DNA from: Obrimoposthia wandeli
Taxonomy: Eukaryota
Direction: 5' to 3'
NCBI GenBank assembly: GCA_977020255.1
Contig: CDROCS010000410.1
Location: forward strand, 248,001-312,000
DNA length: 64,000 nt
The notes under the pieces are model-generated. The model worked only from the letters and a program-made list of their open reading frames with translations, was not told the origin of the DNA and did not search any database. Both the position numbers and the translations under genes were made by a program. This document shows, one piece after another, positions 42,132 through 63,354 of the stretch; positions within the stretch are counted from its first letter, which is position 1, and every line of letters starts with the position of its first letter.

Positions 42132-43364
42132 CTACATACTCTCTTCATGCCCGTAACAAACACCATGACATATTTGCGATAAGGCATGCTCTGCGCGGCC
42201 ATTACTGCTGAGTTGATGTGGGATACGTAAAATAACTTCCACAGAATTTTTATTACCCGCCAAAACTAAAAACAGCGCCGTGGTATTAAAATACGGCGGA
42301 ATAAAAAACACGCTCGTACAAGTGAAACCAGCAGCGCTATATTCATCCACGTTCAGGAAACCGAGATTAGAAATAATCCCAGAAGTACGGTACTGCCCTG
42401 TTTCTTGTCGTTTTAATGCCAGTTTGTCATTGAACTTTTTTAACCACGTTAGCGGTACCCAATTTAATACATTTAATGTCGGAATACCGGCAAACTGCGG
42501 CATTCTTGCATGCTCTAGATCCGCTATTTTAAGCTTGATTTGTTTAGTCCAATCAGCGGTTGTTGTGACGGGTGATACTTGCATCAATAATCCACCAGTC
42601 AAATTACCCGTAGAGACAATATCAGTATCATGCATGCGTAAATCAACTGGTAATTGGATCCGCACAGGCGAGTCAGAATAAAGATTGGCTAACTTAGCAA
42701 CACTGATACCTGCGTTGGCTAATACCTGCTTGTAACTACCAGGCAAAGTGCGGCGCTGCCAAGACGAACCAAAATCTTGCCCAAGTGGCACACCAGTCGG
42801 GGCTGCCACTGTATCGTTAACTTTATCTCCTGGTAGCGAGGTCACCGACTTAGCAAGATCAATATCACGTACAAAACTATTATCACCTTGCAATGTCAGT
42901 TGTCGTAATGCACGTAACACTTCATCAGCAAATGTTTTAGTTCCGCGTCCATCCATCACTGCATGGTGGGTTCTAAATATAATATGGTGTTTACCGTTTT
43001 CTTCTCCGAGTACCAATAAGACTTCACAACCAGTACTGGTTTTTACATCTAAAGGACGATTTAAGAATGGCGCAGCGTTATCACTCATACCATCCCAATT
43101 TAAGCCGCGGATAACTTCAAGCTGAGTTGTGATTCCAGCGTCAGACCAATGGCTAAAGCCAAGTTTACCTGATAGCCTAAATCGCGTGCCCTGCAAAGCC
43201 TCTGATGCTTTCGTAACAGCTTTTTGCCAGGCTGAGATATCAATATCACCTTCGCCTTCAAGTACCATCTGATTGACAACACAGGTCGCCGTTTCTTCGG
43301 CATTAAAATCATCACAACTAATATAAAAACGCTCTGTTGGTGAAAGTTTACGTTTAAACGTCAT
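42132..43364 (-). CDS. Stand-alone condensation-domain / CoA-dependent acyltransferase (likely start 43364, MTFKRKLSPTE)
   Basis: FRTHHAVMDGRG (HHxxxDG), PVDLR, GNLTG, ISNLG; AAGGAGG SD before 43364. Confidence 0.85.
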   Translation of the reverse strand: MTFKRKLSPTERFYISCDDFNAEETATCVVNQMVLEGEGDIDISAWQKAVTKASEALQGTRFRLSGKLGFSHWSDAGITTQLEVIRGLNWDGMSDNAAPFLNRPLDVKTSTGCEVLLVLGEENGKHHIIFRTHHAVMDGRGTKTFADEVLRALRQLTLQGDNSFVRDIDLAKSVTSLPGDKVNDTVAAPTGVPLGQDFGSSWQRRTLPGSYKQVLANAGISVAKLANLYSDSPVRIQLPVDLRMHDTDIVSTGNLTGGLLMQVSPVTTTADWTKQIKLKIADLEHARMPQFAGIPTLNVLNWVPLTWLKKFNDKLALKRQETGQYRTSGIISNLGFLNVDEYSAAGFTCTSVFFIPPYFNTTALFLVLAGNKNSVEVILRIPHQLSSNGRAEHALSQICHGVCYGHEESM

Positions 43365-43389
43365 CGTTCCTCCTTGAACTATAAGACGG

Positions 43390-46300: not shown

Positions 46301-46680
46301 ACCGGCTTAGTCACTTCATCAGGAAATGAGCTGATGCTTTCAATTCTTGATTTAACTTCATCTAACACTGCCTTGGTACTATAACCATCAGCAATATCAA
46401 TGGTGGTATAGCAAGAACCAGAACTGGCGAATGAGGTTAAATCCAGTGTCCCGGCAATATCATAAACGACGGCTTCAATGCGCGTGCAAACAACAGCTTC
46501 AACTTCTCGAGGTGCCGCACCCGGATACAATGTCGAGATCGCAATACGCTCTAATGACACACCAGGAATTAACTCTTTACGCGTTTCGGGTAAGGCTAAG
46601 CAACCAAGGGCAATAATCACCATCATGATCAAATTTGCTGCCACTCGATTATGGGCAAACCAAGTAATTAATACCTTCAT
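43390..46680 (-). CDS. RND efflux permease (AcrB/AcrD/AcrF family)
   Basis: N.VAANL.M, GIVVDDAIVVGE, VSGIVVND.LV, RRFRPIILTSLTT..GL.P; ATGA overlap with the upstream gene. Confidence 0.95.
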   Translation of the reverse strand: MKVLITWFAHNRVAANLIMMVIIALGCLALPETRKELIPGVSLERIAISTLYPGAAPREVEAVVCTRIEAVVYDIAGTLDLTSFASSGSCYTTIDIADGYSTKAVLDEVKSRIESISSFPDEVTKPVVSELIERYRVAKLIISGAGDEWALKRLAENIRLDLLEEPAISVIELQNSRPYEISIALSEDGLAQYNLKFEDVVNTLKATALDLPGGSLATEQGDILIQTLGRIESADDFANIILQANEDGGRILLSDIATINDGFRDEGTMAQLDGQRAVSLDVFRVGDQNIIDVADAINNYVRTPKTYLPEGISLYVWQDDSKLFMSRIDLLVGNVFSGLCLLFVILLLFLNWRLSFWVSLGIPVSFMGAFWLLPIFDGSINIISLFAFLLVLGIVVDDAIVVGESIYTEQAAGNKGVEGAIDGAYKVAKPITFAIITSVIAFMPLLFLPGPEGKLMQVIPVVVITTLLFSLFESLFILPAHLSHDSQPQSQSQPQSPFQSGKSPVVTQNLFMSKAKILGGVLESIQGRFSAALETFVIRQYKPFLDHVLRWRWSYILGFLGLFFISLTLLSSGWLRTVLFSAIEGDIAYANVTFAEGSNPQKTKLALLKIEHEALQLQQELLDENGISAIAHVYSVVAPVSKYSRESQAAADDHIGRVYLELSVSNDRVMSGNDIIRRWRDRVGEIEDSIELNFVADLTPPSADINIELSSRDLDDLAQQAEALKQVMARFEGVYDIQDSQQRSSRQVQLALKPVARDMGLTLSALGQQVQQAYLGVEVLSMPRGEDEVKVQVSYPKTATSSQWHLENMHISLPSGEGVPLFTIADVSYQSADHNIKRYERNRVISVSAFVDPGKNSIKAVIAELESGFLQQLTDTTAVKWSKAGKQKSIVEFIDILTSSYLLALIAMYLVMAILFSSYTQPLLVMFAIPFGLVGSLLGHLLLGVDVTLWSFIGMVAVSGIVVNDNLVLIDYINEKRSQGESLETAITSAGVRRFRPIILTSLTTFIGLVPIMSETSLQAQFLIPMAISLAFGVLFATLVSLLLVPAVYLLIQDMVFALGVLLSRLQSKTPRGSNQMLGDSQINELPDNPAADSAA

Positions 46681-49007
46681 GAGCGCACCACGTTCAACTT
46701 CATGCCATTTACCGCAACGTCAAGCGGGGTTAATATCAGTTTATCGCCAGCTTTTAAGCCACCAGTAATATACACTTGATCTTTACCTTGATGAAGGACG
46801 TCAACGAGGACAATGCTAAGTCGTTGGTCGGCGCCCAACAGCCATACTTTATTATCATTTCGCAATGCTAAACGCGGAATAATCACCACGTTGTCAAACT
46901 CACGACCAGCGATTTCGGCAGTAACAAATCGCCCAGGTTGTAAATACAAGGGTTGTTCCGGATCGTTTAATACCTCAGCAACCACATATTGTAATCGATT
47001 CTCAGCTAAGCCTCCTTCAGTCCCCGTAATAGTCCCTTGCCATTGAAAACGTGCATTATTAACACTCACCGAGAGGGTAACGCGAGGTTTTTTGATTGCA
47101 GGTTCAGCCGCTACCGTATTTTTATCATGCGTAAATGCTGAGACTTTAAAGGGCAGATCCATCAAGGTTAAATATTTATCAGCAACAGGCAGTCGCACAT
47201 GCATTGTATCTAACGCGTATATTTCGCCAATGATTTCGCCTGAGTTAACTAATTGACCTCGGCCAACATCAGCCGTTTTAACACGACCTGAAAACGGCGC
47301 TTTAATAACGGTACGTTCTAATTTTATATTGGCTAAACGTAAGTCAGCTTTAGCCGCCTTAACCCGGCTTTTCGCATCATTAATTTGCGGAATGTGGCGA
47401 GCAAAATTAGTTGCCTTGCTAGAGACTCCACGTCGAGCCACATGGGCTTTTGCTTTAGCCTCAGCTAAGTGCAGTAACGCACCATCTACGGCCTGCTGCT
47501 TTTTAATCACTTCAAGTTGGTATGCTTCATCGTCCATCGATAACAACACATCGCCAGCATTAAAATAGCCACCAGCAGTAAAGCTATCAGCAACAGATTT
47601 AACGTTTGCAGTCACTTCAGAATTAAGGCTAATTTGCGTTTTAGCGGCGACGATACCACGGCTGAAAATAGGGATTATCGCGTTATCAAAAGCCACATCC
47701 ATATAGCGAACGGATGGGAAACGATTAACTTCTGGATTGATTTGGCTCTGTGGTCGAATGACAGATAACAGGGTCATACAAATCACAGTAAATGCCATAA
47801 TCGAAAGTGGGATTGATACTTTTTTATGGCGAATAAATAATAACTGCCCTTGTCGCCAATATGGTAATAACGTGTCTTTAGCTTGCAGTACACCTTTTTC
47901 TATTTTAGGTAATAGATACTGCTTTAACTTGCTGGGTTTACGCTGCTTTTTTGACTTAGTTTTTAATTTAGCCTCTAGCTTAACAACTGCAATTTCTTCT
48001 GGAACCAGTAAGTCACCTTGTAACAAATGCTGTTTCCAACACTGCATTACGGCTTCCGTTATAATGATATCGTCGGCTATATACGGGTGTAATTTCAACC
48101 CCAAAGACAGCTGTTCATGCCACAGTAAAATACCTGTCGAAACTGGATAGTTTTTAGTACCAATGCCACAACAAACCCACATGTCATCTTGGTTCATTGG
48201 TGGATTATTATCATCCTGAAGTGGCCAATTGCCTAAAAAGCTAAATGAACCAGCATAAAATTGGCGCTCACTGACATATTGGTAAATACGACGTACGCCA
48301 TTCTCACCAATAATTTTACCTATATGAGCCTGCCACCAAAGCTGCCAATGACTTTTGGATTTGATCTGTTGCTTCACTTGCAACTGGATATCGCGCGGTG
48401 CAATAGTATTGTTAAGTATGACATTGATACCAGAGGAGCAATTACCCGTTTCAGGGACATTGGGTAACGCCCCACGTAAGTTAACCGGATATAGCCAGTA
48501 GTAGTCTTGTTGGGATGCAAGAAGTTGCTCGGCGACAGCTCTGTTTAACGCCCAGAATAGATAAATATTCAGTGCGACTCTGTGCTTTTTAGCTAATTTT
48601 TTAACCTCGAGTGTTTCAGCTTTACTGAAGTACGTATTAACAATGGGGGCGTCATTACTGTATTGAGTCGTGTTATTGATTGCCGCATGATCGGGGAACG
48701 TAGCTTTCCAACGAATGGTTTTAGCCACATTAGACTTGCCACCAGCAAACAGCATTTTAACTTGCTGCCAATGAGACGGTGCAGTTTTGTCTGCGCTTTT
48801 AGGTAAGTTCACACAAGGGTAATCATGCTCACGCAAGATAGTGGTTAGCCCACCTAATCCATCCATTTGACTGTGCGAAAATTCAAACCAATTAATGTCA
48901 TCCGTGGTTTTATTTAGCAAGCCAACATTCATTCGGTCACCGATCCCAAACGCTTTACGTGCCTGAAACCACATTGCTATATAATCTTTATTCTGGCTAC
49001 TACTCAT
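46677..49007 (-). CDS. Fusion: N-terminal HxxxDG acyltransferase/condensation-like domain (about 330 aa), Lys-rich linker, TM anchor and RND periplasmic adaptor (MFP)
   Basis: FSHSQMDGLGG, PVNLRG, GNCSS, SFLG.W; then KVSIPLSIMAFTVICMTLL TM, G.V..V...F..GG.F..GD.L, RT.IKAPF.GRV, PGRFV.AEI.G. Confidence 0.88.
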   Translation of the reverse strand: MSSSQNKDYIAMWFQARKAFGIGDRMNVGLLNKTTDDINWFEFSHSQMDGLGGLTTILREHDYPCVNLPKSADKTAPSHWQQVKMLFAGGKSNVAKTIRWKATFPDHAAINNTTQYSNDAPIVNTYFSKAETLEVKKLAKKHRVALNIYLFWALNRAVAEQLLASQQDYYWLYPVNLRGALPNVPETGNCSSGINVILNNTIAPRDIQLQVKQQIKSKSHWQLWWQAHIGKIIGENGVRRIYQYVSERQFYAGSFSFLGNWPLQDDNNPPMNQDDMWVCCGIGTKNYPVSTGILLWHEQLSLGLKLHPYIADDIIITEAVMQCWKQHLLQGDLLVPEEIAVVKLEAKLKTKSKKQRKPSKLKQYLLPKIEKGVLQAKDTLLPYWRQGQLLFIRHKKVSIPLSIMAFTVICMTLLSVIRPQSQINPEVNRFPSVRYMDVAFDNAIIPIFSRGIVAAKTQISLNSEVTANVKSVADSFTAGGYFNAGDVLLSMDDEAYQLEVIKKQQAVDGALLHLAEAKAKAHVARRGVSSKATNFARHIPQINDAKSRVKAAKADLRLANIKLERTVIKAPFSGRVKTADVGRGQLVNSGEIIGEIYALDTMHVRLPVADKYLTLMDLPFKVSAFTHDKNTVAAEPAIKKPRVTLSVSVNNARFQWQGTITGTEGGLAENRLQYVVAEVLNDPEQPLYLQPGRFVTAEIAGREFDNVVIIPRLALRNDNKVWLLGADQRLSIVLVDVLHQGKDQVYITGGLKAGDKLILTPLDVAVNGMKLNVVRS

Positions 49008-49120
49008 CGGTTAGCTTCCTTGTTAACCAAACTGAATGCCTCGAAAAAATCGAAACTTTAAAATTTAAACCTTTAGCTTTAACCTTTAGCCTTTAACCTC
49101 GTCCTTTACAACCTAGCCCT

Positions 49121-50278
49121 TTACAACCTGGCAGGTTCTAAATACAAGGGATATGTTTTGTCAAAATTAGCGCGTGGATCATCGTGATAACTAGCAATGA
49201 AATGTTTGCTATGCAGTACTTTAGAACGATATTGTTCGAGAATATGCTGACGGGTATCTATCGAGGGTAATCCGCATACTAACGCCTGATAGTTTTGCGC
49301 TAAACAATCATTATAAATATGCTCTAATAACCGTGAAAATAACTTTTCATCATCATTAATGACTAACAAGCTATGCAGCGACACATAACTGAGTTTATCT
49401 CCGGATTTCGGTAGCATCATGCCGCCGAACAATGTCGAGTAAGCATTATTAAGTAAGCGCACCACAGCCATCAATTTACTGTAAGCGACAAAACGCGTTT
49501 GTTTAAAGCTGCTTTGATCCCAAATACCAGCCATTGCGACAAGTTGGTTACCTTCGAACATCAAGTAATAATTACTGATGACGAGTCCTCGGTAATACTC
49601 ATCGCCATTTAATAATTTAATAAAATCATAATGCGGATAAAACTGTTTAGTCTTAGCTTGCTGCTCAAAGAAGACTTGCATCAATTCAATATCATTATGA
49701 TCCGCTTTACGGATGTTAAACTTACTTTCTTGATTTGAATGTGGCAAAGAACGAGGCCTACTTATAAGAGATTTAGCTATACGAGGCCTAGTTATACGAG
49801 GTCTAGTTAAATACAACATATGCGTTGTCATCTCACCAAAATCATAATACGTAGGCGTGATACTACGTCCGCTGCCGATTGAATTTAAAGAAGCATTGTT
49901 ATCACTCAGGATCACGGTCTGCATCCAATCACGACCCATCGCTTGGCGATAACATTTCAAAAGATTAAAGAGAGTCCGACCACTTTTGAAGTCAGGGTGG
50001 ATCCGTAAGTCATTACCATAACGTACTTGCTGACGCTCACCATTCACATAAACATCACGATGACCAATACTAAAGATTGCGGCAACACGTTCGCTTTCAC
50101 GCTCAATCGCAACCCAAACATCCGGTATCTGAGTCACTACTTTCGTGGCCATAAAAAAATCAGGCATGCGTTCAAAATTGATTGTAATTGCCCCGGCCTG
50201 AGGGGTTGCTGCAATTAATGCGATCAATTCATCAGAATCATTTGTTTGTGCTGGCCTTGTATAGAATCGGCTTGCCAT
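49121..50278 (-). CDS. Tandem GNAT-fold acyltransferase-like protein (NMT/FemAB-like architecture)
   Basis: R.A...D...L, YGNDLRIHPDFKSG, second GNAT-like half (IRKA...D, L.AMAGIWDQ..FKQ). Confidence 0.7.
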   Translation of the reverse strand: MASRFYTRPAQTNDSDELIALIAATPQAGAITINFERMPDFFMATKVVTQIPDVWVAIERESERVAAIFSIGHRDVYVNGERQQVRYGNDLRIHPDFKSGRTLFNLLKCYRQAMGRDWMQTVILSDNNASLNSIGSGRSITPTYYDFGEMTTHMLYLTRPRITRPRIAKSLISRPRSLPHSNQESKFNIRKADHNDIELMQVFFEQQAKTKQFYPHYDFIKLLNGDEYYRGLVISNYYLMFEGNQLVAMAGIWDQSSFKQTRFVAYSKLMAVVRLLNNAYSTLFGGMMLPKSGDKLSYVSLHSLLVINDDEKLFSRLLEHIYNDCLAQNYQALVCGLPSIDTRQHILEQYRSKVLHSKHFIASYHDDPRANFDKTYPLYLEPARL

Positions 50279-50352
50279 TGGTATTACCTCGACGACTTAA
50301 TGAAGCTTTATACGTTATTGTGATTACTGCCTATTTACTGCAACCTAACTGC

Positions 50353-52005
50353 CTATGCGGCAATCGCTTGAAGAAAGATATCCGGCATATCAACATCCCA
50401 AAGTACTAAAGGCTCAATTTTTATATTACCAACAACCATGCCGCGCGCTTCACAACGTGAATAATACAAATCACGCGCGTTCTGACTACAACATACTTTT
50501 AACGCATCCAGCTGACCAAGATCTCTTGCTAATTGGTAATGGAAGCAAGCCTGCAATTCAGCTTCGGCATTGGCAGCAACCTGCTGCATTTCCAGTTCGC
50601 TAATATGGCTATTCGGTTCACACAGTAAAAGATAAAATGGTTTTTCATGCGAGCTATTAGCCGGTACAGCAAAAACCGTGATAGCTGTTAATCGTGAGTC
50701 TTCCTCGGCGGTTTTCATCACTTCAAGCGCGATCTCTGGACTCATTTTTTCACCAACAAGATCAATACCATCCAAGCGACCTAAAAATTCAAAACAAGGA
50801 CAATCTTGCAGGAAACCACTGACACGTAATTTATCTTTCATCGCATATCGCAGTAAGCCACTGCCTGTAGTTAATACCGGTCTTACAAGCTGATCTTGTT
50901 TGAGTTTCCAAGCGGGTAATACCGCGTCAGTCTCAAGGTCAATAAATTCATAAAAATGACTGCATATGGCTAATGGATATTGCCCTTGGAAAGGAATAGT
51001 GACAACTCCCTCAGTAGCCCATAATCCCTTGCCTTGAAACTCCCCTTGTGGCAGTAAATCTTTCAATTTATTCGCCCACGTAGTAGATGACGATGTATCC
51101 CATGCGCTAACCAGCACCAATCGAGGCCAAATTTGTTGTAACAACTCAGCAGAAATACCGCCCTTCCATTGCAATAGCAACTCAGCAACACGTTGTGATT
51201 TAGGGCATTTCAATCCAGGTAATGCCGCAGCACGCTTACCCCACTTGCCTGTCGCCAATACCGATACCAGCTCTAATTTATGTTTAATAATATTATCAAA
51301 TAAGGTCAGTGCAAAAGTAGGACTCCACACCGACAGGAAACTTAACGACTTATCCGCCAGTAAATAACATAACGTGGCAAATTGAGAGTCTTCTGATGTA
51401 TCAGCTAAAGACACACCTTCAGGTACCGAACTGGTCACCCCCATAAATATCCTTTTCCACCAAGGCAGTAACTTCAAGTCGTCATTCACCGCACCAGATA
51501 TCGTCCGTCTTAATTCTGTCGGCACCCAAGACAATGACCAATAGTGCGTCCCTTTAAGCATGCCTGGATTATCTTTATACATATCCACCATCCAAGGCGA
51601 AATTGCAGCATCAAGTTCATTTAAAAATGACTGCGTATAAGGGATCCATTTTATTTTAGAGGTTGAGCCACTTGTCGGCTGAAATCGTTCATTCTCTTCA
51701 ATACTCAACTCTTGACTACTACCCGACCTGGCTTTTTCTATTTGTATTGCCCAATCGTCATATTCAGTGATAGGTACCTTACGAATAAACTCTTCATAAA
51801 ATAGCGAAGTCGATAGATTATATTTCTTACCTGATACACTTGGCGCGATCACTTTAAGCAATGAACTTAATTTTTCACGTTGCACTGCTTGCGGGTGCGC
51901 CAAGGCTTTACAAAATTGTTTGTATCCATACAAGCTCAATTTATTTGCTGCTTGATGAGTGAATTTATGTGCGAGCTTACGGGTGATGCTATTGATTAAC
52001 GCCAT
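50353..52005 (-). CDS. GH3 family acyl-acid amido synthetase
   Basis: VPITEYDD, FQPTSGST...KWIPYT, KGLWATEG..TIP, HFYEF, L.TGSGL.RY.M.D, F.GR......GEK. Confidence 0.9.
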   Translation of the reverse strand: MALINSITRKLAHKFTHQAANKLSLYGYKQFCKALAHPQAVQREKLSSLLKVIAPSVSGKKYNLSTSLFYEEFIRKVPITEYDDWAIQIEKARSGSSQELSIEENERFQPTSGSTSKIKWIPYTQSFLNELDAAISPWMVDMYKDNPGMLKGTHYWSLSWVPTELRRTISGAVNDDLKLLPWWKRIFMGVTSSVPEGVSLADTSEDSQFATLCYLLADKSLSFLSVWSPTFALTLFDNIIKHKLELVSVLATGKWGKRAAALPGLKCPKSQRVAELLLQWKGGISAELLQQIWPRLVLVSAWDTSSSTTWANKLKDLLPQGEFQGKGLWATEGVVTIPFQGQYPLAICSHFYEFIDLETDAVLPAWKLKQDQLVRPVLTTGSGLLRYAMKDKLRVSGFLQDCPCFEFLGRLDGIDLVGEKMSPEIALEVMKTAEEDSRLTAITVFAVPANSSHEKPFYLLLCEPNSHISELEMQQVAANAEAELQACFHYQLARDLGQLDALKVCCSQNARDLYYSRCEARGMVVGNIKIEPLVLWDVDMPDIFLQAIAA

Positions 52006-52014
52006 GCCATCCCC

Positions 52015-52806
52015 CTACTTAACTAAACGACGAGTTAAACTAATAAGTCCTAAATCCCAATTGATATTGTTTTTTTGCAATGTCTTGCTTAGTGATTTTC
52101 GTGCAAAATAGCTAAACATTGAGGCGTTAATTTGACCAATACAAGGTAGTTCCTTACCCTCACGCCAATTCGGATTACGGTCTTCAAAGAATCCAATTTT
52201 AGGTACAGTTCGTTTCAACTCTGAGGTTATCTCAGCCACTTCTCCACGTAGCTTTTGGTAATCGCCACCAAAATCTAAGATTTGCTGCTGCGCGTCGAAA
52301 TAACTTGGATACAGGTGTTCGCAATATTGATCGACAACTGATGATAATTCATCAAACTTGCCTTGGTGATGTGGATAATGTTTTGGGAAGTTATTGGCGA
52401 GTAATAAGTAAGTTTTATAACCTTTGGAAATAAGTAGCCAAAATAACGGCGTGAGTGGATCGCGTAGTTTTTCCTTTAATAACACTTTAACAAAACAGAT
52501 CATCGCCTTATTGGTTCCCCAATACTGGCGCTCTAAAATAGTATCACCACTAAAGATACCTTTAACCTCTCTGCCTTTCAGGTTGAAGCGTAACGTTTTT
52601 AACGTACTAAAACCGACAATGCGCTTTGATTTACTTTCGCGGATCAAAATCAAACCGTCTTTTTCAGACAAATCATCTATGAATGTTGAAAAATCCGCAT
52701 TGTGATAGTACTGAATAAAGAGCGTATGCATTTCCTTTACCTGCTGGATAGAAATGCGATCTAATGTAATGTAATCTGCTGATATCTTCTGTTTTGTCGT
52801 TTCCAT
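52015..52806 (-). CDS. GNAT-like protein of the GH3-associated family (likely start 52806, METTKQ)
   Basis: F..DL.EK, RIVGFST, FSGDTI....YWG, WLLISKGYKTY..L.N.F..HYP. Confidence 0.7.
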   Translation of the reverse strand: METTKQKISADYITLDRISIQQVKEMHTLFIQYYHNADFSTFIDDLSEKDGLILIRESKSKRIVGFSTLKTLRFNLKGREVKGIFSGDTILERQYWGTNKAMICFVKVLLKEKLRDPLTPLFWLLISKGYKTYLLLANNFPKHYPHHQGKFDELSSVVDQYCEHLYPSYFDAQQQILDFGGDYQKLRGEVAEITSELKRTVPKIGFFEDRNPNWREGKELPCIGQINASMFSYFARKSLSKTLQKNNINWDLGLISLTRRLVK

Positions 52807-53137
52807 TTGTGACCCAATCCTTGGCAAATGTGTAGGTGTAAGAATAAAAGTAAATGTACCCTCATTCAATCTCAAGCCATCCTTAGCTTGCTGTCTTTTA
52901 GATCATCCGGTGTGAAGGATTAAATCTGAAAGTAAAATGAATGTATCACTAAAATATGCTCGCTTGAAGACAATCAAAATACCTTAAAGAAGCATGATAA
53001 CCGGACATAGATTAGCGATAAAAGCTAGATTGACGAGTGGGAACAGTTCAAATTTAATCAAAGTCCCCATTAAACAGATAAATATGCCATAACTCTTATT
53101 TTACAAACTTCAGCTACGACAATTATATCTGTCTAGA

Positions 53138-55364: not shown

Positions 55365-56744
55365 ATGACAACACCCGCCTTGCCTATACTAGCCACTTTT
55401 TGGAGACCTCTTATTAAGCGTATTTACTTATCCTTGCTTGTCTTAGCCTCGCAACTTGTTTTAACACCGCTAACAGCAAATGCCGACCCACTCACCAAGT
55501 ATCAATATCTACCGATTACTGTTGCTGATATGCCCTTCTTTACGACTGAAGAACAGGCAGAGCAACGCACGGATGAATATAACAATGCTATCGATGAGAT
55601 TAATCATGCTTTAGAAACATGCGATAAGAGTGAATGCATAACGTTGAAGCAACGTCAGGCTGATCTAGAATATGCAATTGACGACCACCAAGAGAAAAAT
55701 GGCAGTTCAATCATGTCTTTACTTGGCGGACCAGCGTACACGCCTGAAGTTGGCTTAATGTTGGCTGCTGGTGGGTTATTCTCGTTTAGTACCAATCGTG
55801 AAGAACAAACATTACAACGCTCAAGTGTGTCGCTATTTGCCGTAGGCACCCAAGGCGATGCAGGTATGGGTTATGGTATTCGTTCAAAGCAAAATTTGTT
55901 TTTCGATAATAATGATACGCGATTTACAGGTACCCTCACATTCAGTGATGATGCCGAAAACTACTGGGGTGTGGGTTACGACAAAGGTAAAGCACAAGAT
56001 TCATCAGCCGATACTTTGATGCGGAATACCGCACTGACCTATGACGCCAATTTATCATTTAAAAACGATTACGGTTTCTATTTTGGTCCTGCTTTACGGC
56101 TGAAATATTACCAAGCAGATGAAGATGAAATCCCGCTTACTGCACAACAAGATGACGATTTTAACGAATTTAAAGACAAACCCTTATCCATAGGTTTGGG
56201 TGTCACATTAAATTACGATACCCGAGATGTCACCGTTAACGCATGGCAAGGCCAGTATTTCAATTTTGAATACATTAACTATGGCTCGAACATCGGTAGC
56301 GACAATGATTACCAAAAGGCGCTGATCGATTATCGTTATTACTACAGCTTTAATCCAGGTCAGGTCATCGCTTTTTACAATGCCCTGCAATGGAGTAATG
56401 GTGACGTGCCGTTTTACGATATGCCGACACTTGGTGGTAGCTTTTCGCTGCGAGGCTTATACGCTGGGCGATTTAGAGATAACAACGCCATTGAGCACAC
56501 GACCGAATATCGCCACACATTCTTGCGTGATAACGGTAATTTATCTGCCCACGGCATGACTGTATGGGCAGGTATTGGTTCTGTTGCAGGCGATGCAGAC
56601 AGTAGCCATTTGTATGAAAATTTATTGTATAGCTACGGGTTTGGCTATCGCTATGAATTACAGCCAAGAATGAATGTTCGTATAGACTTCGGATTCAGTG
56701 CTGATGACAGCGGCTTTTTCCTTACTTTTACTGAAGCATTTTAA
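55365..56744 (+). CDS. POTRA-less Omp85/BamA-TamA-like beta-barrel, paralog A1
   Basis: LGG..SLRGLYAGRFRD (RGY-like L6 motif), G.GYRYE, RMNVRIDFG, C-terminal EAF. Confidence 0.82.
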   Translation: MTTPALPILATFWRPLIKRIYLSLLVLASQLVLTPLTANADPLTKYQYLPITVADMPFFTTEEQAEQRTDEYNNAIDEINHALETCDKSECITLKQRQADLEYAIDDHQEKNGSSIMSLLGGPAYTPEVGLMLAAGGLFSFSTNREEQTLQRSSVSLFAVGTQGDAGMGYGIRSKQNLFFDNNDTRFTGTLTFSDDAENYWGVGYDKGKAQDSSADTLMRNTALTYDANLSFKNDYGFYFGPALRLKYYQADEDEIPLTAQQDDDFNEFKDKPLSIGLGVTLNYDTRDVTVNAWQGQYFNFEYINYGSNIGSDNDYQKALIDYRYYYSFNPGQVIAFYNALQWSNGDVPFYDMPTLGGSFSLRGLYAGRFRDNNAIEHTTEYRHTFLRDNGNLSAHGMTVWAGIGSVAGDADSSHLYENLLYSYGFGYRYELQPRMNVRIDFGFSADDSGFFLTFTEAF

Positions 56745-56791
56745 TCACGACAAGCACTTTATATTTTTAAACTTTGGACCTTCTCAATACA

Positions 56792-57907
56792 ATGAAACGA
56801 ATAATACTTACTTTATTAACGGCTTTAACAGCGCCACTCACTTTTGCAAACAATACCGAATCTGTGGCACAAGCTGATACAGCAAGCAGTAATGCGTTAT
56901 TCCCACCGTTATTTGAACTGCAAGATGAAACTATATTTGGTTTACCGTCTCTTATGTCTCAAGATATGTCTCAAGCGCAAAATGCAGCGTTCCTGACACA
57001 GGAGGACACTGAGAGTGAAACATCAAAATTAGACCTTTCAATAGTAGATAAAAAAACAGCTAACCCGGGGAAGAAATGGGAACACGCTTTACCGTTTTTT
57101 GCCGAAGACGTCATCATGAATGGTTATGACTTACCGCTGCCATTTGGTATCAGTATTATTTATGCCAACGTCCAACAGGATATGACTTTAACCGACTTAT
57201 CGGTTGGTTACGGTGGTTCTGAAAAAGTAGATATAGACTTTGTTTCGTTTGATGACACCGAGTCCAATACCCACACCCCACAGCTAAAGTTAGATGCTTG
57301 GGTATTCCCATTCATGAATGTATTTGCCACAGTTGGTAAATTAACGGGCACCGTGGACATTAACTTCGCTATTGATGGTAATGATGCCTTAGAACAAGGA
57401 AACGTAGATTGCTCTTTAATTAAAAATCGTCCTCTATGTAAAGCCTTAAGTGACAAACGTCTTGAAGTCGAAGACATTGAAGCTAGCTTAACCGGTATGT
57501 CTTACGGGGCAGGTATGATGTTTGTCGGCGGTTGGAACAGTTACTTTATTTCTGTCCCTGTGACATTCACTTGGACCGATATGGATCGCAGTGATACCGA
57601 GGGTTATGTGGTCAATGTGCTGCCACGAGTAGGTAAACAATTTCAGTTTAATAATGGCTCAAGCTTATCACTGTACGTAGGCACAAGTTATTTAAAAAGC
57701 CAGTTAACCCTGTCTGGTTCGCAGCCAATACCAACGACAGAGCACAGTATTGATTACAAAATAGAACAAGAAAACGTCGATAAATGGATGGGGCTGGTCG
57801 GTGGTAGTTATAACTTAAGTAAACATTGGATGGTGGCTTTTGAGTATGGCGGCATCGGTGGCGCGAGTCGCCAGCAATTTATTACCAACCTGTCTTATCG
57901 TTATTAA
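56792..57907 (+). CDS. Uncharacterised small outer-membrane beta-barrel, paralog B1 (start moved to ATG 56792)
   Basis: Signal peptide; LPFF......G..LPLPFG, KLDAW.FPF.NVF..VG; ends SYRY. Confidence 0.75.
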   Translation: MKRIILTLLTALTAPLTFANNTESVAQADTASSNALFPPLFELQDETIFGLPSLMSQDMSQAQNAAFLTQEDTESETSKLDLSIVDKKTANPGKKWEHALPFFAEDVIMNGYDLPLPFGISIIYANVQQDMTLTDLSVGYGGSEKVDIDFVSFDDTESNTHTPQLKLDAWVFPFMNVFATVGKLTGTVDINFAIDGNDALEQGNVDCSLIKNRPLCKALSDKRLEVEDIEASLTGMSYGAGMMFVGGWNSYFISVPVTFTWTDMDRSDTEGYVVNVLPRVGKQFQFNNGSSLSLYVGTSYLKSQLTLSGSQPIPTTEHSIDYKIEQENVDKWMGLVGGSYNLSKHWMVAFEYGGIGGASRQQFITNLSYRY

Positions 57908-57967
57908 CCATTAGTCCATGTATTAGACTAATATTGAAGAGATTGATTATAGGGATATGGAGTCTCC

Positions 57968-59314
57968 ATGCGATTAGAAAGGAAATTCAAGAGCATCACT
58001 CGACTAGGGCTTGTTATAGTGACAGCTACCTGTTTCTCTGCATTCAACGTTATGGTCCATGCCAAACCTTCAGCAAAAGTTAAATCAACCCTAAACCGCG
58101 CTGAAACCCCTAATAAGGTGACAGAAAAACTAATCCTGCCGTATTTATTTTCTACAGACTCAATGGGGTTAAATATAGGCGTCGGTGGTATGGTCAGCGG
58201 CTATTATCAAGATCAAATGACCATAGGTGGAGCCGCATTTGGTGGTGACGTAAGTTATGGCGCAGGGCTCGGCGTTTGGGATTACCGCTTACCAAAAACA
58301 GATCGCCTATACTTTAGCATATTAGGCATGCTGGGGTACTATCCTGATCAACGAGCTTATGCCAGCCCTAGAGATACCTACACTCCAATCAGTGAACCAT
58401 TAGCTGGTAGTAATAATTCATCGAATGACCATTATATTGAAGCTAATGGGTCGTCAAATTGGTGGGAAATGAAATTAGAGTTTTCGTTACCCATCGGCGC
58501 AACCCGAACTCAGGGGATGGTTAAATATGAAACTAGCCGTGGTTTATTAACCTCTGAGCCAACTGGCGGAGAATCCTGGAACCCATTAGACACGGGAGCA
58601 TCAGTATTAATTCTAAGGCAATTTAATCGCTACCAAAGCTTTGAAACTGGACCAGACGCGATTGATGGAACTATCCATGCTTTTGAGCTGGGGTTATTAT
58701 ACAACAATACTGACTTTGCCATTAATCCCTCAACTGGCAGTAGTCAATATATTGCCATAACCCACGATCCTGCTTGGCTCGATTCCGATCGTCGATGGAC
58801 ATTCATTGATCTCGAAATGAGTAAATATGTCTCGCTTGGACAATCTGAAGGTGCATCACAACGTATTATCGCAATGAATTTTTGGACTGGGTATTCACCG
58901 TCTTGGCAACTTGAGTATGATAATGCCGGAGGTCAACAAGTGACGAATTCAGCACCGTATAATGAAGGCGCTACATTAGGCGGCTTCTATCGTATGCGTG
59001 GTTATGACCAAAATAGATTTCATGATAAAGCGGCTATTTATGGTAGCCTAGAATATCGTTATACCTTTAAACATAACCCAATTGCAGATATACGTTGGTT
59101 GAAATTCTTACGCCTTGATTGGTTTCAGTTAGTCGGCTTTGCTGAAGTTGGGCAGGTAGCGGACGCCTATACGAGCAACGCATTATTTGCGGATATAAAA
59201 ACCGATGCAGGTCTTTCCTTACGCTCCTTAATGGCAGGGATGGTGATCAGAGCTGATATTGCCGTTTCCGATGAAAGCACTAACCTATGGTTGATGGTAG
59301 ACCATCCTTTCTAA
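57968..59314 (+). CDS. POTRA-less Omp85/BamA-TamA-like beta-barrel, divergent paralog A2
   Basis: LPY.FSTDSMG, LGG.YRMRGY.QNRF.DK, ends VDHPF. Confidence 0.8.
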   Translation: MRLERKFKSITRLGLVIVTATCFSAFNVMVHAKPSAKVKSTLNRAETPNKVTEKLILPYLFSTDSMGLNIGVGGMVSGYYQDQMTIGGAAFGGDVSYGAGLGVWDYRLPKTDRLYFSILGMLGYYPDQRAYASPRDTYTPISEPLAGSNNSSNDHYIEANGSSNWWEMKLEFSLPIGATRTQGMVKYETSRGLLTSEPTGGESWNPLDTGASVLILRQFNRYQSFETGPDAIDGTIHAFELGLLYNNTDFAINPSTGSSQYIAITHDPAWLDSDRRWTFIDLEMSKYVSLGQSEGASQRIIAMNFWTGYSPSWQLEYDNAGGQQVTNSAPYNEGATLGGFYRMRGYDQNRFHDKAAIYGSLEYRYTFKHNPIADIRWLKFLRLDWFQLVGFAEVGQVADAYTSNALFADIKTDAGLSLRSLMAGMVIRADIAVSDESTNLWLMVDHPF

Positions 59315-59559
59315 ATCGATTATAGATTTACGCTATTACTTTAATAACAAACTCGTATTCAGTATATAAAGTCACCATACCTAGTGATTGATTATTGTTT
59401 TTAGCTCATTTTTTTATAACATTGCATTAACTTAAGTGCACATCTAGAATAGCCCATCTTTGTAATACCTATAATTTTCCAAGAGTTACATGACACTCTG
59501 GCATAAATTTGATTACGGGGGCTATTTTAAACGTTATAACTTTGGGTTACTGCAATACG

Positions 59560-60516
59560 ATGAAACGAATGCCTCTTACATTAACGACAGCCCTAATAAC
59601 GACTTTAGTCGCGGCTTCAACAGCGCCACTTGTTTATGCTAACGATATAACGACAACTGAAAGCACCGTTGCAGCAACAAAAAAATGGGACCGCCTGTTA
59701 CCTTTTTTTGGCGAAAGAGCCGTTATGAATGGCCATGAATTACCACTTCCATTTGGCATCAGTGTCATTTATGCCGATGCTCAGCAAGATATGACACTGA
59801 CCGATTTATCTGTTGGCTTTGCAGGTTCAAAAGAATACGACCTTGATTTCATTTCGTTTGATAACACCATATCCCACACCCAAACTCCCCAACTAAAGCT
59901 AGATGCGTGGGTACTGCCCTTTGTGAATGTATTTGCTACCTTTGGTAAGGTTATAGGAACCGCGAACATTAACTTTGCAATTGATGGGAATGAAGCCTTA
60001 AAACAAATGGGGATCAAATGCCCTTCAACAACGAATAGTGACATATGCAAAAAACTCAACAATCAACGATTTGAAATTGATGAGGTTGAAGCCGACATCA
60101 GTGGTATGTCTTACAGCACTGGTTTAGTTCTGGTTGGTGGCTGGAACAGCTATTTCATGTTATTGCCTATCGTTTTATCTTGGACTGATATGGAGCGTAA
60201 TGACAGCGACAGTTATACCGTTAATATCTCACCACGATTAGGCAAAAAATTTACATTTAATAACGGAGCTAATCTATCTTTGTATACTGGTGTGAGCTAC
60301 TTAAATAGCCAACAAACGCTATCGGGTTCACAAGTCATGGATGGAACAGGCGAGAGTTTCGACTATACAATATCTCAAGAAAATATAGATAAATGGATGG
60401 GTGTTGTCGGTGGTAGTTACAGCTTCACTAAGCACTGGTCACTGGCCTTTGAATACGGAGGTTTCGATGGTGGGAATCGTCGACATTTTGTCTCTAATTT
60501 AACTTATCGTTATTAG
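59560..60516 (+). CDS. Uncharacterised small outer-membrane beta-barrel, paralog B2 (start moved to ATG 59560)
   Basis: Collinear with B1 (LPFFG...G.ELPLPFG, TPQLKLDAW, ENIDKWMG, NL.YRY). Confidence 0.75.
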   Translation: MKRMPLTLTTALITTLVAASTAPLVYANDITTTESTVAATKKWDRLLPFFGERAVMNGHELPLPFGISVIYADAQQDMTLTDLSVGFAGSKEYDLDFISFDNTISHTQTPQLKLDAWVLPFVNVFATFGKVIGTANINFAIDGNEALKQMGIKCPSTTNSDICKKLNNQRFEIDEVEADISGMSYSTGLVLVGGWNSYFMLLPIVLSWTDMERNDSDSYTVNISPRLGKKFTFNNGANLSLYTGVSYLNSQQTLSGSQVMDGTGESFDYTISQENIDKWMGVVGGSYSFTKHWSLAFEYGGFDGGNRRHFVSNLTYRY

Positions 60517-60755
60517 CGTTTTACTATTGTTCACAGCCTAAACCACAACATACCTAGTTATACATTATTGAATACTTTCAACACCTTGCATTCATTTTCC
60601 TGCACACCTAAAATACGCCATCTTTAGAATACCAATGACTGAAATTGATTCTTCGATTGTCATAATAAAAGTCTCAATTAGCGGTAACTTTCACGTATTT
60701 TTCACAACTGTAAATTTACAATCACGCCGCTTATAAACACCATTTTGGAGATCTC

Positions 60756-62066
60756 TTGATTAAACGATTTTACGTACCTTTACTTGCTTTCACTCCGTTA
60801 ATGGTAAATGCAGATCCACTCACCGAATATCAGTATTTACCTACAGATGTAACAGAAATGCCTTTCTTTTCGACAGACACGCAAGCACAACAACGCACTG
60901 AAGAATACAACACTGCGATTGATGCACTTGATACTGCCCTTGATGACTGTGAAGCAGAAGTATGTGAAACGTTAACGCAGCGCCAAGCTGATCTTGAATA
61001 TGCTATCGATGATCACCAAGAAAAAAATGGGGCATCAATCACGTCTTGGTTAGGCGGTCCTGCTTATACTCCTGAAGTCGGTTTAATGGTCGCTGCTGGT
61101 GGTTTATTTTCGTTTAGTACTAATCGTGAAGAGCAAGAATTACAACGTTCAAGTGTGTCCTTATTTGCTGTAGGAACACAAGGTGACGCAGGTTTTGGCT
61201 ATGGTATCCGCTCAAAACAGAATCTATTTTTTGATAACAATGATACCCGTTTCAGTGGTGCGTTGACATTCAGCGATGACGCTGAGAATTACTGGGGGAT
61301 TGGTTACGAAAAAGGTAAAGCCCAAGATTCATCTGATGACACCTTGCTGCGTAATACCTCGTTGACCTATGACGCTAATCTATCGTTTAAAAATGATTAC
61401 GGTTTCTACTTTGGTCCTGCTTTACGTTTGAAATATTACCAAGCAGACGAAGATGAGATCCCACTAACGGCCAGCCTAGACGATAACTTTAACGAATTTA
61501 AAGATAAGCCTTTATCCATTGGTTTAGGTGTCACGGTCAATTACGATACTCGAGATGTCACTGTTAATGCATGGGAAGGTCAATACCTTAACTTTGAATA
61601 CATTAATTATGGTTCGGTGATCGGTAGCGACAATGATTACCAAAAAGTACTACTTGATTACCGTTACTACCATAGCTTTAATCCTGGTCGTGTTGTGGCT
61701 GTTTACAATGCGATGCAGTGGAGTAAAGGCGATGTACCTTTCTATGATATGCCAACACTCGGCGGTAGTTTCTCGCTACGCGGTTTATACGCTGGTCGTT
61801 TTAGAGATAATAATGCCATTGAGCACACGGTTGAATATCGTCACACTTTCTTGCGCGATAACGGCAATTTATCTGCCCACGGTATGACTGTTTGGGGTGG
61901 TATAGGTTCAGTTGCCGGTGACGACACTAACTTGTATGACAACCTTTTATATAGCTACGGTGTTGGTTATCGCTATGAATTACAGCCACGTATGAATGTG
62001 CGTATCGATTTTGGTATGAGTGCGGATGACAGCGGGTTCTTCCTGACGTTCACTGAAGCTTTCTAG
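60756..62066 (+). CDS. POTRA-less Omp85/BamA-TamA-like beta-barrel, paralog A3 (close paralog of A1)
   Basis: Long identical peptide blocks shared with A1; TTG start with GGAG SD. Confidence 0.82.
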   Translation: MIKRFYVPLLAFTPLMVNADPLTEYQYLPTDVTEMPFFSTDTQAQQRTEEYNTAIDALDTALDDCEAEVCETLTQRQADLEYAIDDHQEKNGASITSWLGGPAYTPEVGLMVAAGGLFSFSTNREEQELQRSSVSLFAVGTQGDAGFGYGIRSKQNLFFDNNDTRFSGALTFSDDAENYWGIGYEKGKAQDSSDDTLLRNTSLTYDANLSFKNDYGFYFGPALRLKYYQADEDEIPLTASLDDNFNEFKDKPLSIGLGVTVNYDTRDVTVNAWEGQYLNFEYINYGSVIGSDNDYQKVLLDYRYYHSFNPGRVVAVYNAMQWSKGDVPFYDMPTLGGSFSLRGLYAGRFRDNNAIEHTVEYRHTFLRDNGNLSAHGMTVWGGIGSVAGDDTNLYDNLLYSYGVGYRYELQPRMNVRIDFGMSADDSGFFLTFTEAF

Positions 62067-62168
62067 TTTGAACTCGACACCTTAAATTTTAATAGATTAA
62101 AAATCTGTTAATAAAACAATAGTATAAAAAAACAATTTGAATTTAACACTTTGGACTCTTGCAATACC

Positions 62169-63269
62169 ATGAAATTAACAACACTTGCTCTATTAACAAC
62201 CTTAACTACCCCGCTTGCTTTTGCAAACGATGCTGAACAGTTAGATCCACAATCAGATCAAGAATTAGATCAAGAATTAGATCAAAAATCAGCGGTTACT
62301 ACATTAACGCCTGAAACATCTGCAGCGATTGATTCAAGTAATAATGCTCCGTCATTCCCTGAATCATTTAAGCCTCAAGGCGAAGCGGTATTAGGGTTAC
62401 AATCACTTGAGTCTCAAACTATTGCCATTCAAGAAGAACATTGGAGTGGCTTACCTTTCTTAGGTAAGAAAGCGCGTGAAATGGGTTATCAACTCCCTAT
62501 CCCACTGGGTTTTAATGTTTTTTATAACAAGCAAGAAGTAGCTTATGTTGCGCAAGATGATTTCAAATTAGGCTTGAAAGGCGAAAGAGCCGGGCGACCA
62601 ACACATCGAGATCCGACCCCTGCACCTAAAGAAATTTCTGGTGATATAGCCATTGCAGCAGACAAGATTTCAATCACAGGCGAAGATGAAAGTGTACAAT
62701 TAAAAGTAGATGCTTGGATCTTACCTTTCTGGAATGTTTACGGATTATTGGGTTACACCAAAGGTAATAAAGATATAGCCATGGATTTATCATCAATTGG
62801 TATATCCCAACCGCTTGTATTACCAATTGAATACGAAGCTTATAATGTCGGTATTGGCCAAGTACTCGCAGGTCAAGTTGAAGTTATTCCAGGTATGCAT
62901 CCATTCGTTTTTACTGCTGTAACAGCATTTACCAATTCATGGACAACAACCACAGATAGCACGATTCAGACGTATATTGGTTCATTCCGCGCTGGTCAAC
63001 GTTACGCAGTACCGGGTGGGCAATTAGCTGTATTACTTGGTTATAACTATCAATTAATAAACCAAAATATCACAGGTTCTTACTCGTTTGACTTACCTGA
63101 TGGTTATCTTGATGTTGACTATGATGTTGCGCTTAAGAGCCAAGAAACCAGTAACATGTCTGTAAGCATGGTTTACGACTTTGGTCCAAAACAAGAATGG
63201 AACATGTTCTTAGAATATGGTTTCTTAAACTGGAACCAAGTGATCTTCTCTGTAGGTCGTCGTTTCTAA
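62169..63269 (+). CDS. Uncharacterised small outer-membrane beta-barrel, divergent paralog B3 (start moved to ATG 62169)
   Basis: LPFLG..AR..GY.LP.P.G, KVDAWILPFWNVYG..G; ends GRRF. Confidence 0.75.
   Translation: MKLTTLALLTTLTTPLAFANDAEQLDPQSDQELDQELDQKSAVTTLTPETSAAIDSSNNAPSFPESFKPQGEAVLGLQSLESQTIAIQEEHWSGLPFLGKKAREMGYQLPIPLGFNVFYNKQEVAYVAQDDFKLGLKGERAGRPTHRDPTPAPKEISGDIAIAADKISITGEDESVQLKVDAWILPFWNVYGLLGYTKGNKDIAMDLSSIGISQPLVLPIEYEAYNVGIGQVLAGQVEVIPGMHPFVFTAVTAFTNSWTTTTDSTIQTYIGSFRAGQRYAVPGGQLAVLLGYNYQLINQNITGSYSFDLPDGYLDVDYDVALKSQETSNMSVSMVYDFGPKQEWNMFLEYGFLNWNQVIFSVGRRF
62238..62285 (+). repeat. In-frame 12-bp repeat, 4 units (QLDP QSDQ ELDQ ELDQ), in the B3 N-terminal linker
   Basis: gaattagatcaa x2 plus two degenerate units. 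Confidence 0.85.
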
Positions 63270-63295: not shown

Positions 63296-63354
63296 TAAAA
63301 AGCCGTTGTTACTCTACTGTTATTTTAATTTCAGTAAGTAACAACGGCTTTTTA
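63296..63354. terminator. Bidirectional terminator with an 18-bp perfect inverted repeat
   Basis: TAAAAAGCCGTTGTTACT ... AGTAACAACGGCTTTTTA. Confidence 0.88.

What the first reader, a model, noticed from the sequence alone, without database searches (positions are those of the whole stretch)
55365..63269. Triplicated two-gene module: POTRA-less Omp85-like barrel plus small beta-barrel (A-B-A-B-A-B)
Seen: strict alternation of three Omp85/BamA-like barrels lacking POTRA domains with three members of a second barrel family. A1/A3 and B1/B2 are close paralogs; A2 and B3 are divergent. Established: Omp85 proteins without N-terminal POTRAs form a recognised but functionally uncharacterised class. 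Inference: each A-B pair is a functional unit (dedicated insertase plus client, or a heteromeric channel), diversified for different substrates or phage-receptor variation.
Basis: partly seen in the sequence, partly recalled or inferred. Interest (0 to 1): 0.72.

Follow-up and report, generated by a model that had tools for sequence, protein, structure and literature searches.

The report
Omp85 barrels paired with partner barrels
A marine Moritella bacterium carries six outer-membrane barrel genes in a row, alternating between two protein families that travel together in many bacteria, usually with a fat-cutting enzyme, which hints at what a poorly understood class of Omp85 proteins does.

Summary
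Six same-strand genes alternate between POTRA-less Omp85 barrels (A1-A3) and an unnamed barrel family of about 12 strands (B1-B3).

It is not a clean triplication. A1 and A3 are recent duplicates (83-85% identical). A2 is a Moritella-only, very divergent Omp85. B1 and B2 (60%) sit inside a clade of SYLF-fused lipoprotein barrels. B3 belongs to a different clade. Five other Moritella genomes carry different subsets of the six genes.

The A-B link is real and widespread:
- In 301 genomes of the same order, 51 of 55 genomes with B also have A (odds ratio 103).
- At least 41 of 60 short B genes lie within 2.5 kb of an A gene on the same strand, often with overlapping stop and start codons.
- In 43 of 47 linked loci fetched from that sample, outside the Moritella array, the gene string also encodes a lipid hydrolase (DUF4056, alpha/beta-hydrolase, patatin or PLD); most of those whose N-termini I read carry a lipoprotein signal.
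- An IS66-flanked B-A-DUF4056 cassette sits on E. coli plasmids.

Best reading: A plus B form the outer-membrane core of a lipid-processing module, like a split PlpD. The Moritella array is an enzyme-free, mosaic expansion of it. The function is inferred, not shown.

This scan also noted the canonical B-DUF4056-A operon elsewhere in this genome (s1-247259).

The parts
55365..56744 (+). A1: POTRA-less Omp85 barrel of clade I, with a signal peptide and an N-terminal helical hairpin. The true start may lie near 55413: the codon matching A3's TTG start is CTT here, next to an ATT and behind a GGAG motif.
   Evidence: PF01103 E 2.6e-11. AF2 pLDDT 91, 16 strands, helices 62-83 and 88-111. BamA Z 24.4 and TamA Z 21.6. 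Start region read.
56792..57907 (+). B1: outer-membrane barrel of about 12 strands from an unnamed family. It has a signal peptide (no lipobox), a disordered acidic/Ser-rich stretch of about 70 residues, then the conserved motif W-x3-LPF...GY-LP-PFG ahead of the barrel.
   Evidence: PF13505 reaches only 19.8 bits against a cut-off of 28.7. It nests inside the SYLF-type clade.
57968..59314 (+). A2: highly divergent Omp85 barrel found only in Moritella. It starts 60 nt after B1.
   Evidence: PF01103 E 4.3e-11. RGY loop-6 motif is kept. Very long branch of 3.8 changes per column. Missing in the L096, L097 and L107 genomes.
59560..60516 (+). B2: paralog of B1 (60% identical) with a short N-terminal region. 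Gaps of about 240 nt flank it on both sides.
   Evidence: Missing in M. dasanensis (L009), in L098, and in one metatranscriptome contig that skips 59331-60539.
60756..62066 (+). A3: recent duplicate of A1 (83-85% identical). TTG start behind a GGAG motif.
62169..63269 (+). B3: divergent member of the B family (24-33% identical to B1) with a low-complexity N-terminal stretch.
56610..56860 (+). Junction made of the A1 3' end, the intergenic leader and the B1 signal peptide. It is homologous (74-81%) to the A3/B3 junction at 61932-62237. Beyond it, the mature B1 and B3 parts are unrelated at DNA level, which marks a recombination mosaic.
   Evidence: Direct repeats D4, D5, D6 and D7.
63296..63354 (.). 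Perfect 18-bp inverted repeat just after the B3 stop, between B3 and the convergent trhO-like gene. It is the likely terminator of the array.
   Evidence: Inverted repeat I2.

Best explanation
The stretch encodes three POTRA-less Omp85 barrels and three members of an unnamed outer-membrane barrel family of about 12 strands.

Shown: these two families form a conserved, co-inherited gene module in Gammaproteobacteria and in at least two other phyla. In most genomes the module also includes one or two lipid hydrolases; most of those whose N-termini I read carry a lipoprotein signal. The hydrolases are DUF4056 (the 'CapCone' branch of the Lipocone superfamily), alpha/beta-hydrolase, patatin or phospholipase D.

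Inferred: A and B sit side by side in the outer membrane. They act as the membrane core of a lipid-processing or lipid-homeostasis machine, a split and heteromeric counterpart of PlpD. In PlpD, two Omp85 barrels are thought to disturb the inner leaflet so that a periplasmic patatin domain can extract phospholipids. Here the Omp85 barrel and the partner barrel would create or guard such a site. B may also serve as a route for hydrophobic products. The hydrolase would do the chemistry.

The Moritella array belongs to an enzyme-free subclass: a clade-I Omp85 with a helical N-terminal hairpin followed by B, as also seen in three other genomes. It grew by duplication and recombination at a hypervariable locus. 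The same genome keeps the canonical B-DUF4056-A operon elsewhere, so the array probably supplies alternative barrel subunits or works with enzymes encoded elsewhere.
For: Families and folds.

Genome co-occurrence: in an order-level sample of 301 genomes, 55 have B, 78 have A and 51 have both. Fisher odds ratio 103, p 8e-33.

Adjacency: at least 41 of 60 short B genes lie within 2.5 kb of an A gene on the same strand. The rough chance expectation is about 0.3% per gene.

Architectures checked in fetched DNA:
- B-ABH-DUF4056-A: 14 of 14 loci predicted from gap size
- B-DUF4056-A: 5 of 5 such loci, plus L105 and the window's own genome (L002)
- B-A-DUF4056: 9 of 9 such loci, plus L079, L080, L082, L084, L085, L102 and L103
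- A'-B-A-DUF4056, with a FadL gene next to it in two of the three loci
- long-B with PLD or patatin and A
- SYLF-B followed by A and an alpha/beta-hydrolase
Gaps of -1 to -8 nt are common. Eight of the twelve hydrolase N-termini I read show a lipobox.

Mobility: the B-A-DUF4056 cassette is flanked by IS66 on E. coli plasmid p12A2 and matches other large plasmids.

Co-inheritance: the A and B trees agree at clade level. The group holding L104, L106, L105/L002 and L075/76 has the same topology in both. Mantel r 0.18, p 0.013.

Precedent: PlpD is an Omp85 barrel with a periplasmic patatin domain. It forms a homodimer, and lipid composition changes in the mutant (PMC11116518).

Expression: marine metatranscriptome contigs 95-99% identical cover A1, B1 and A2.
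Against: No experiment or complex prediction shows that A and B touch each other.

The window's own array has no hydrolase gene, and neither does the whole 64-kb window. Its function may therefore have drifted from the enzyme-linked operons.

B1 and B2 descend from the SYLF-type clade, whose members mostly have no A gene nearby.

The Mantel correlation is weak.

Genomes in the sample are related, so the Fisher p-value overstates independence. Only the six best candidates per genome were scored. The adjacency count was tallied by hand.

Structural matches for B are generic barrels with low TM-scores. No catalytic or lipid-binding feature of B is shown.

RNA-library contigs may include contaminating DNA.
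Confidence: 0.5

Rival explanations
1. Dedicated insertase plus client. A is a specialised BamA-like foldase that inserts B, and perhaps B-lipoprotein complexes, into the outer membrane. B is the working channel.
For: B almost never occurs without A in a genome (51 of 55), while A occurs without B in 27 genomes. All studied Omp85 proteins assemble or translocate proteins. Sam50 works without its POTRA domain (cited in PMC4104836). The A fold is closest to BamA and TamA.
Against: A and B both end in a canonical aromatic C-terminal residue, typical of ordinary BAM substrates. Most SYLF-type B genes have no A nearby. This reading does not explain the near-constant hydrolase partner or the A'-B-A arrangements. 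There is no POTRA to receive substrates.
Confidence: 0.2
2. Export or surface-display system. A and B move the linked lipoprotein hydrolases to the cell surface or outside, as TpsB or Slam transporters do. In Moritella the array serves cargo encoded elsewhere.
For: Eight of the twelve hydrolase N-termini I read have lipoboxes. TpsB members of the Omp85 superfamily secrete partner proteins (FhaC and CdiB are among the fold matches). The cassette is mobile on plasmids. A DUF4056 ORF was proposed as a candidate secreted effector in Salmonella (PMC11669294).
Against: There is no POTRA or TPS-type recognition domain. The PlpD work argues that folded lipase domains stay periplasmic and cannot pass a folded 16-strand barrel. 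No cargo gene lies in or next to the Moritella array.
Confidence: 0.15
3. The genes are unrelated porins or uptake channels that happen to be clustered. The array is an outer-membrane protein island diversified for substrates or to escape phages, with no A-B cooperation.
For: Gene content of the array differs among Moritella species. B has weak fold or feature likeness to FadL/TodX and COG4313-type channels for hydrophobic compounds.
Against: Adjacency and co-occurrence are far above chance across many genera, in both gene orders. Stop and start codons overlap. A1/A3 divergence lies in the periplasmic N-domain, not in the surface loops.
Confidence: 0.08

Closest known systems
noNterm (POTRA-less) Omp85 subfamily: Heinz and Lithgow 2014 (PMC4104836); Leptospira LIC12252/12254/12258, Bettin et al. 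2024 (PMC11358297)
   Same: A 16-strand Omp85 barrel without POTRA. Several paralogs per genome, clustered. Some Leptospira paralogs are flanked by a lipoprotein gene (DUF1566). Function unknown.
   Different: The Moritella proteins do not hit the DUF5982 signature of the Leptospira/Bacteroidota subset. A1 and A3 carry a helical N-terminal hairpin. The partner barrel family B and the lipid-hydrolase operons are not described in either paper as far as I read them.
PlpD / PL-Omp85 proteins, formerly called type Vd secretion (Hanson et al. 2024, PMC11116518)
   Same: An Omp85 barrel works with a periplasmic patatin-like lipase. Two barrels sit side by side. The proposed role is outer-membrane lipid homeostasis. 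Some relatives of this module have a patatin gene between B and A.
   Different: PlpD is a single polypeptide with a POTRA domain and forms a homodimer. Here the barrel, the enzyme and a second, different barrel are separate genes. The enzymes vary. The window's own array has no enzyme.
Two-barrel Omp85 assemblies: Sam50-Mdm10 or Sam50-Tom40 in mitochondrial SAM, and the TamA-TamB hybrid barrel
   Same: An Omp85 barrel partnered with a second beta-barrel or beta-strand partner at its lateral seam. SAM and TamAB entries are among the fold matches of A1.
   Different: These are protein-assembly or lipid-transfer machines with other partners. No evidence here shows that A opens laterally or binds B.
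CapCone-DUF4056 family of the Lipocone superfamily (bioRxiv 10.1101/2025.01.14.632903)
   Same: DUF4056 is the most common third gene of the B-A module. That preprint predicts members of the Lipocone superfamily to act on lipid head groups. It notes OMP barrel partners for other Lipocone families.
   Different: The passages of the preprint's main text that I searched give no gene context for DUF4056 and do not mention Omp85. No DUF4056 gene lies in this window.

Membership tests
Omp85 superfamily (PF01103) | Profile match above the curated cut-off | tested here: met
   A1 44 bits, A2 43.4 bits, A3 51.1 bits against a cut-off of 24.
Omp85 superfamily (PF01103) | 16-stranded C-terminal beta-barrel | tested here: met
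   The AF2 model of A1 has 16 strands and pLDDT 91. The top 17 structural matches are all Omp85/TpsB proteins, Z 17-24. A2 and A3 were not modelled.
Omp85 superfamily (PF01103) | Conserved loop-6 (V/I)RG(F/Y)-type motif | tested here: met
   RGL/RGY is invariant in A1-A3, and R363/G364 are (near-)invariant across 47 relatives.
Canonical BamA/TamA/TpsB | [quoted passage not shown] | tested here: not met
   No POTRA family hit at E up to 0.1. NCBIfam BamA and Omp85 models match only the barrel part, far below their cut-offs. The A1 model shows a helical hairpin instead.
noNterm Omp85 subset carrying DUF5982 (Leptospira/Bacteroidota type) | DUF5982 signature over the first two strands | tested here: not met
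   No such Pfam hit for A1-A3. The signature is described in PMC11358297.
PL-Omp85 / PlpD | N-terminal patatin domain fused to POTRA and an Omp85 barrel | tested here: not met
   No patatin hit in A1-A3 or anywhere in the window. Patatin occurs as a separate gene only in relatives' loci.
Two-partner secretion (TpsB with TpsA) | Adjacent TpsA exoprotein with a TPS domain | tested here: not met
   The neighbours are B barrels, TauE and TrhO.
OMP_b-brl (PF13505), for B | Profile match above the curated cut-off | tested here: not met
   B1 19.8 bits and B2 20.3 bits against a cut-off of 28.7; B3 gave no hit. No NCBIfam hit. No relative by sequence in the PDB.
COG4313 / 'MetA-pathway of phenol degradation' channels, for B | Sequence or structure match to the family | tested here: inconclusive
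   The only links are automatic names of the nearest ESM-Atlas clusters and a Foldseek hit to 4rl8 with TM about 0.3. No Pfam hit.
B-A(-hydrolase) module defined here | B-family barrel and POTRA-less Omp85 on the same strand within 2.5 kb | tested here: met
   All three window pairs meet this, with gaps of 47, 60, about 245, 239 and 102 nt.
B-A(-hydrolase) module defined here | Lipid hydrolase gene in the same gene string | tested here: not met
   None in the array or in the 64-kb window. It is present in the second locus of the same genome, L002.

The most novel reading that the evidence does not exclude
A and B form a heteromeric double barrel through the lateral seam of the Omp85 protein, a bacterial counterpart of Sam50-Mdm10. 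This double barrel gates outer-membrane lipids to exchangeable lipoprotein hydrolases, which would define a previously undescribed, widespread and mobile lipid-remodelling machine. It would also give the POTRA-less Omp85 class its first function.

In Moritella the six-gene array would supply interchangeable subunits. It might also be the outer-membrane end of the adjacent GH3 lipid/RND export operon, for which I found no outer-membrane factor gene.
Probability: 0.25. Interest if true: 0.85.

Novelty: new variant of a known kind. Interest (0 to 1): 0.66.

Why it matters
POTRA-less Omp85 proteins have been a recognised class without a function since 2014. This locus and its relatives link that class to a fixed partner barrel and to four unrelated kinds of lipid hydrolase. 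Together with the recent re-reading of PlpD, that points to outer-membrane lipid homeostasis rather than protein assembly.

The IS-flanked three-gene cassette on E. coli plasmids gives a small, self-contained system. It can be moved into a laboratory strain and tested directly.

Tried and rejected
- Simple tandem triplication: rejected. A1 and A3 are 85% identical, but their partners B1 and B3 share only 24-33% and fall in different clades. Array content also differs among Moritella genomes.
- Surface-loop diversification: rejected by the position of the A1/A3 differences.
- Synteny with an RND pump across genera: a 1022-aa neighbour looked shared, but it is AcrB in Moritella and an autotransporter in the other genus.
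- Naming the B fold: Foldseek and VIA-align gave only generic barrels, and a PDB profile search found nothing. The Atlas structure library was unavailable.
- Literature: searches on noNterm, DUF4056, Omp85 with patatin or POTRA-less, BamK and SYLF found no description of this module.
- Complex prediction: not possible with the tools on hand.
- The large representative protein search was not used. The word search and the genome searches left no open question that needed it.
Full report
**What is there.** The window is a Moritella contig (C410) inside a 1.35-Gb multi-organism assembly. Between a TauE-family gene and a convergent trhO-like gene lie six ORFs on the + strand. A1, A2 and A3 hit Pfam Omp85 above its cut-off and have no POTRA hit. 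NCBIfam Omp85 and BamA models match only their barrel halves. B1, B2 and B3 form a second family with only sub-threshold PF13505 scores. A1 and A3 are 83-85% identical. A2 is about 24% identical to A1 over its last 170 residues. B1 and B2 are 60% identical. B3 is 24-33% identical to B1.

**Structures.** The AlphaFold2 model of A1 (pLDDT 91) has a signal peptide, a confident helical hairpin (residues 62-111) and a 16-strand barrel. Its 17 best structural matches are all Omp85/TpsB proteins: F. nucleatum BamA at Z 24.4, TamA at Z 21.6, then SAM50, CdiB and FhaC. The hairpin is shared by the whole clade to which A1 and A3 belong, in Shewanella, Vibrio, Photobacterium, Ferrimonas and Marinobacter. 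The B1 model (pLDDT 82) has a disordered N-terminal stretch of about 90 residues, a conserved pre-barrel motif and a barrel of about 12 strands. It matches only generic barrels: OpcA, OmpT, autotransporter beta-domains, and weakly FadL/TodX. It has no relative by sequence in the PDB.

**The array is a mosaic, not a triplication.** In the A tree, A3 nests within the Moritella A1 group, so it is a recent duplication. A2 sits on a very long, Moritella-only branch. In the B tree, B1 and B2 nest inside a clade of proteins of about 490 residues from Vibrionaceae, Shewanellaceae and Alteromonadaceae. These carry a lipobox and a SYLF-like N-terminal domain. PF04366 scores 28.3 bits in one member, and several are named SYLF by their sources. 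The A 3' end, the intergenic leader and the B signal peptide are homologous between the A1/B1 and A3/B3 junctions (74-81%). The mature B parts are not, which points to recombination. Other Moritella genomes carry A1-B1; A1-B1-A2; A1-B1-A2-A3-B3; A1-B1-B2-A3-B3; or B-B-A3-B3. One environmental contig skips B2.

**The A-B link is real.** The B family is large: at least 564 loci among species-representative genomes, spanning several phyla. I sampled 301 genomes of the order that contains Moritella. B was found in 55, POTRA-less-type A in 78, and both in 51. Fisher odds ratio is 103, p 8e-33. By hand tally of those two outputs, at least 41 of 60 short B genes lie within 2.5 kb of an A gene on the same strand. 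The rough chance expectation is about 0.3% per gene. I fetched 60 of these loci and classified them with my own A, B and DUF4056 profiles. Every predicted linkage held. Clades of A and B match each other, with identical topology for the L104/L106/L105-L002/L075-76 group. A Mantel test on 33 pairs gives r 0.18, p 0.013.

Three caveats apply. The genomes are related. Only six candidates per genome were scored. The SYLF-type B genes mostly have no A nearby.

**What travels with the pair.**
- B-alpha/beta-hydrolase-DUF4056-A: 14 of 14 loci with a 2.3-kb gap
- B-DUF4056-A: 5 of 5 such loci, plus L105 and the window's own genome on contig C506
- B-A-DUF4056: 9 of 9 such loci, plus L079, L080, L082, L084, L085, L102 and L103
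- A'-B-A-DUF4056, followed in two of the three loci by a FadL homologue
- a long form of B with phospholipase D or patatin and A
- SYLF-B, then A, then an alpha/beta-hydrolase
- one B-patatin pair without A

Of 47 linked loci fetched from the order sample, outside the Moritella array, 43 carry at least one such hydrolase. Gaps of -1 to -8 nt are common. Eight of the twelve hydrolase N-termini I read carry a lipobox. On E. coli plasmid p12A2 the B-A-DUF4056 trio is flanked on both sides by IS66 elements. Similar matches occur on other large plasmids of Escherichia, Klebsiella, Serratia, Aeromonas and others. DUF4056 has been placed in the Lipocone superfamily as 'CapCone-DUF4056', whose members are predicted to act on lipid head groups.

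**The window's subclass.** A->B pairs with a clade-I Omp85 occur as stand-alone two-gene units in three other genomes, with unrelated neighbours. The 64-kb window has no DUF4056, patatin, PLD or related hydrolase. Differences between A1 and A3 concentrate in the periplasmic N-domain (32%). Strands differ by 11% and extracellular loops by 13.5%. This argues against surface-directed diversification. It fits altered partner specificity, which is an inference.

**Expression.** Marine metatranscriptome contigs 95-99% identical cover parts of A1 and B1 and nearly all of A2. Contaminating DNA in those libraries cannot be excluded.

**Mechanism.** The closest studied analogue is PlpD. It is an Omp85 barrel whose patatin domain stays in the periplasm. 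It dimerises, and it is proposed to extract inner-leaflet phospholipids at a destabilised zone between two barrels. I read the B-A(-hydrolase) module as a split, heteromeric version of that idea. That A and B touch, and that lipids are the substrate, are inferences from gene context only. Three rivals remain open: dedicated insertase plus client, lipoprotein export, and unrelated channels. Each is weighed in its own section.

**Novelty.** POTRA-less Omp85 proteins are a known class of unknown function. I found no paper describing the B family or its link with these Omp85 proteins and lipid hydrolases. A Xenorhabdus preprint merely labels 'lipoprotein', 'membrane protein' and DUF4056 genes in a figure legend. 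Another first-stage note in this scan flagged the B-DUF4056-A operon of this genome. I had found and tested that operon independently.

Noticed in passing
window 42132-52875 (- strand): The neighbouring GH3 / acyltransferase-adaptor fusion / AcrB-type operon shows no TolC-like outer-membrane factor in the four of its six ORFs that I scanned (the 437-aa ORF gives only a weak Condensation-domain hit). It starts 2.5 kb from the barrel array and points the other way. In two other Moritella genomes (L096, L107) a different RND pump abuts the array. A functional link is untested.
   Followed up: partly
L003:4427-5836 (- strand; own assembly, contig C506): A solo clade-I Omp85 (45% identical to A1) whose N-terminus has a lipobox-like 'VVGC' motif. 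It would be a lipid-anchored Omp85 barrel.
   Followed up: no
L007 (own assembly, contig C3203, about 46460-48911): A second, Moritella-like copy of an A-B pair (75-87% identical). Both genes are broken into several frames with many stops. This is either a low-quality contig of another strain or a pair of decayed genes.
   Followed up: no
window 59331-60539: One metatranscriptome contig (run X5) joins 59331 to 60539 with 90 other letters in between. That is a natural variant lacking B2, as in M. dasanensis.
   Followed up: partly
L148 (E. coli plasmid p12A2, NZ_CP128591.1 139291-142533): A three-gene cassette (hypothetical protein = B, BamA/TamA family protein = A, DUF4056 protein) bracketed by IS66 elements. 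DNA matches to the A/DUF4056 junction occur in 8 of 5426 complete E. coli genomes, mostly on plasmids.
   Followed up: partly
L141 (G139:C1, about 2565659-2566435 and the next gene): A B-family barrel overlapping by 4 nt with a patatin-like gene, with no Omp85 within 5 kb. B can therefore pair with a lipase without an A gene in cis.
   Followed up: no
L099:7886-9514, L100:7385-9028, L101:6819-8399: Long forms of B (526-547 aa) carry an N-terminal domain of about 250 residues with no Pfam match. They sit next to PLD or patatin genes.
   Followed up: no
window 41249-42091 (+ strand): An MbnB/TglH/ChrH-type RiPP precursor-modifying enzyme homologue (E 1e-85), just beyond the GH3 operon.
   Followed up: no
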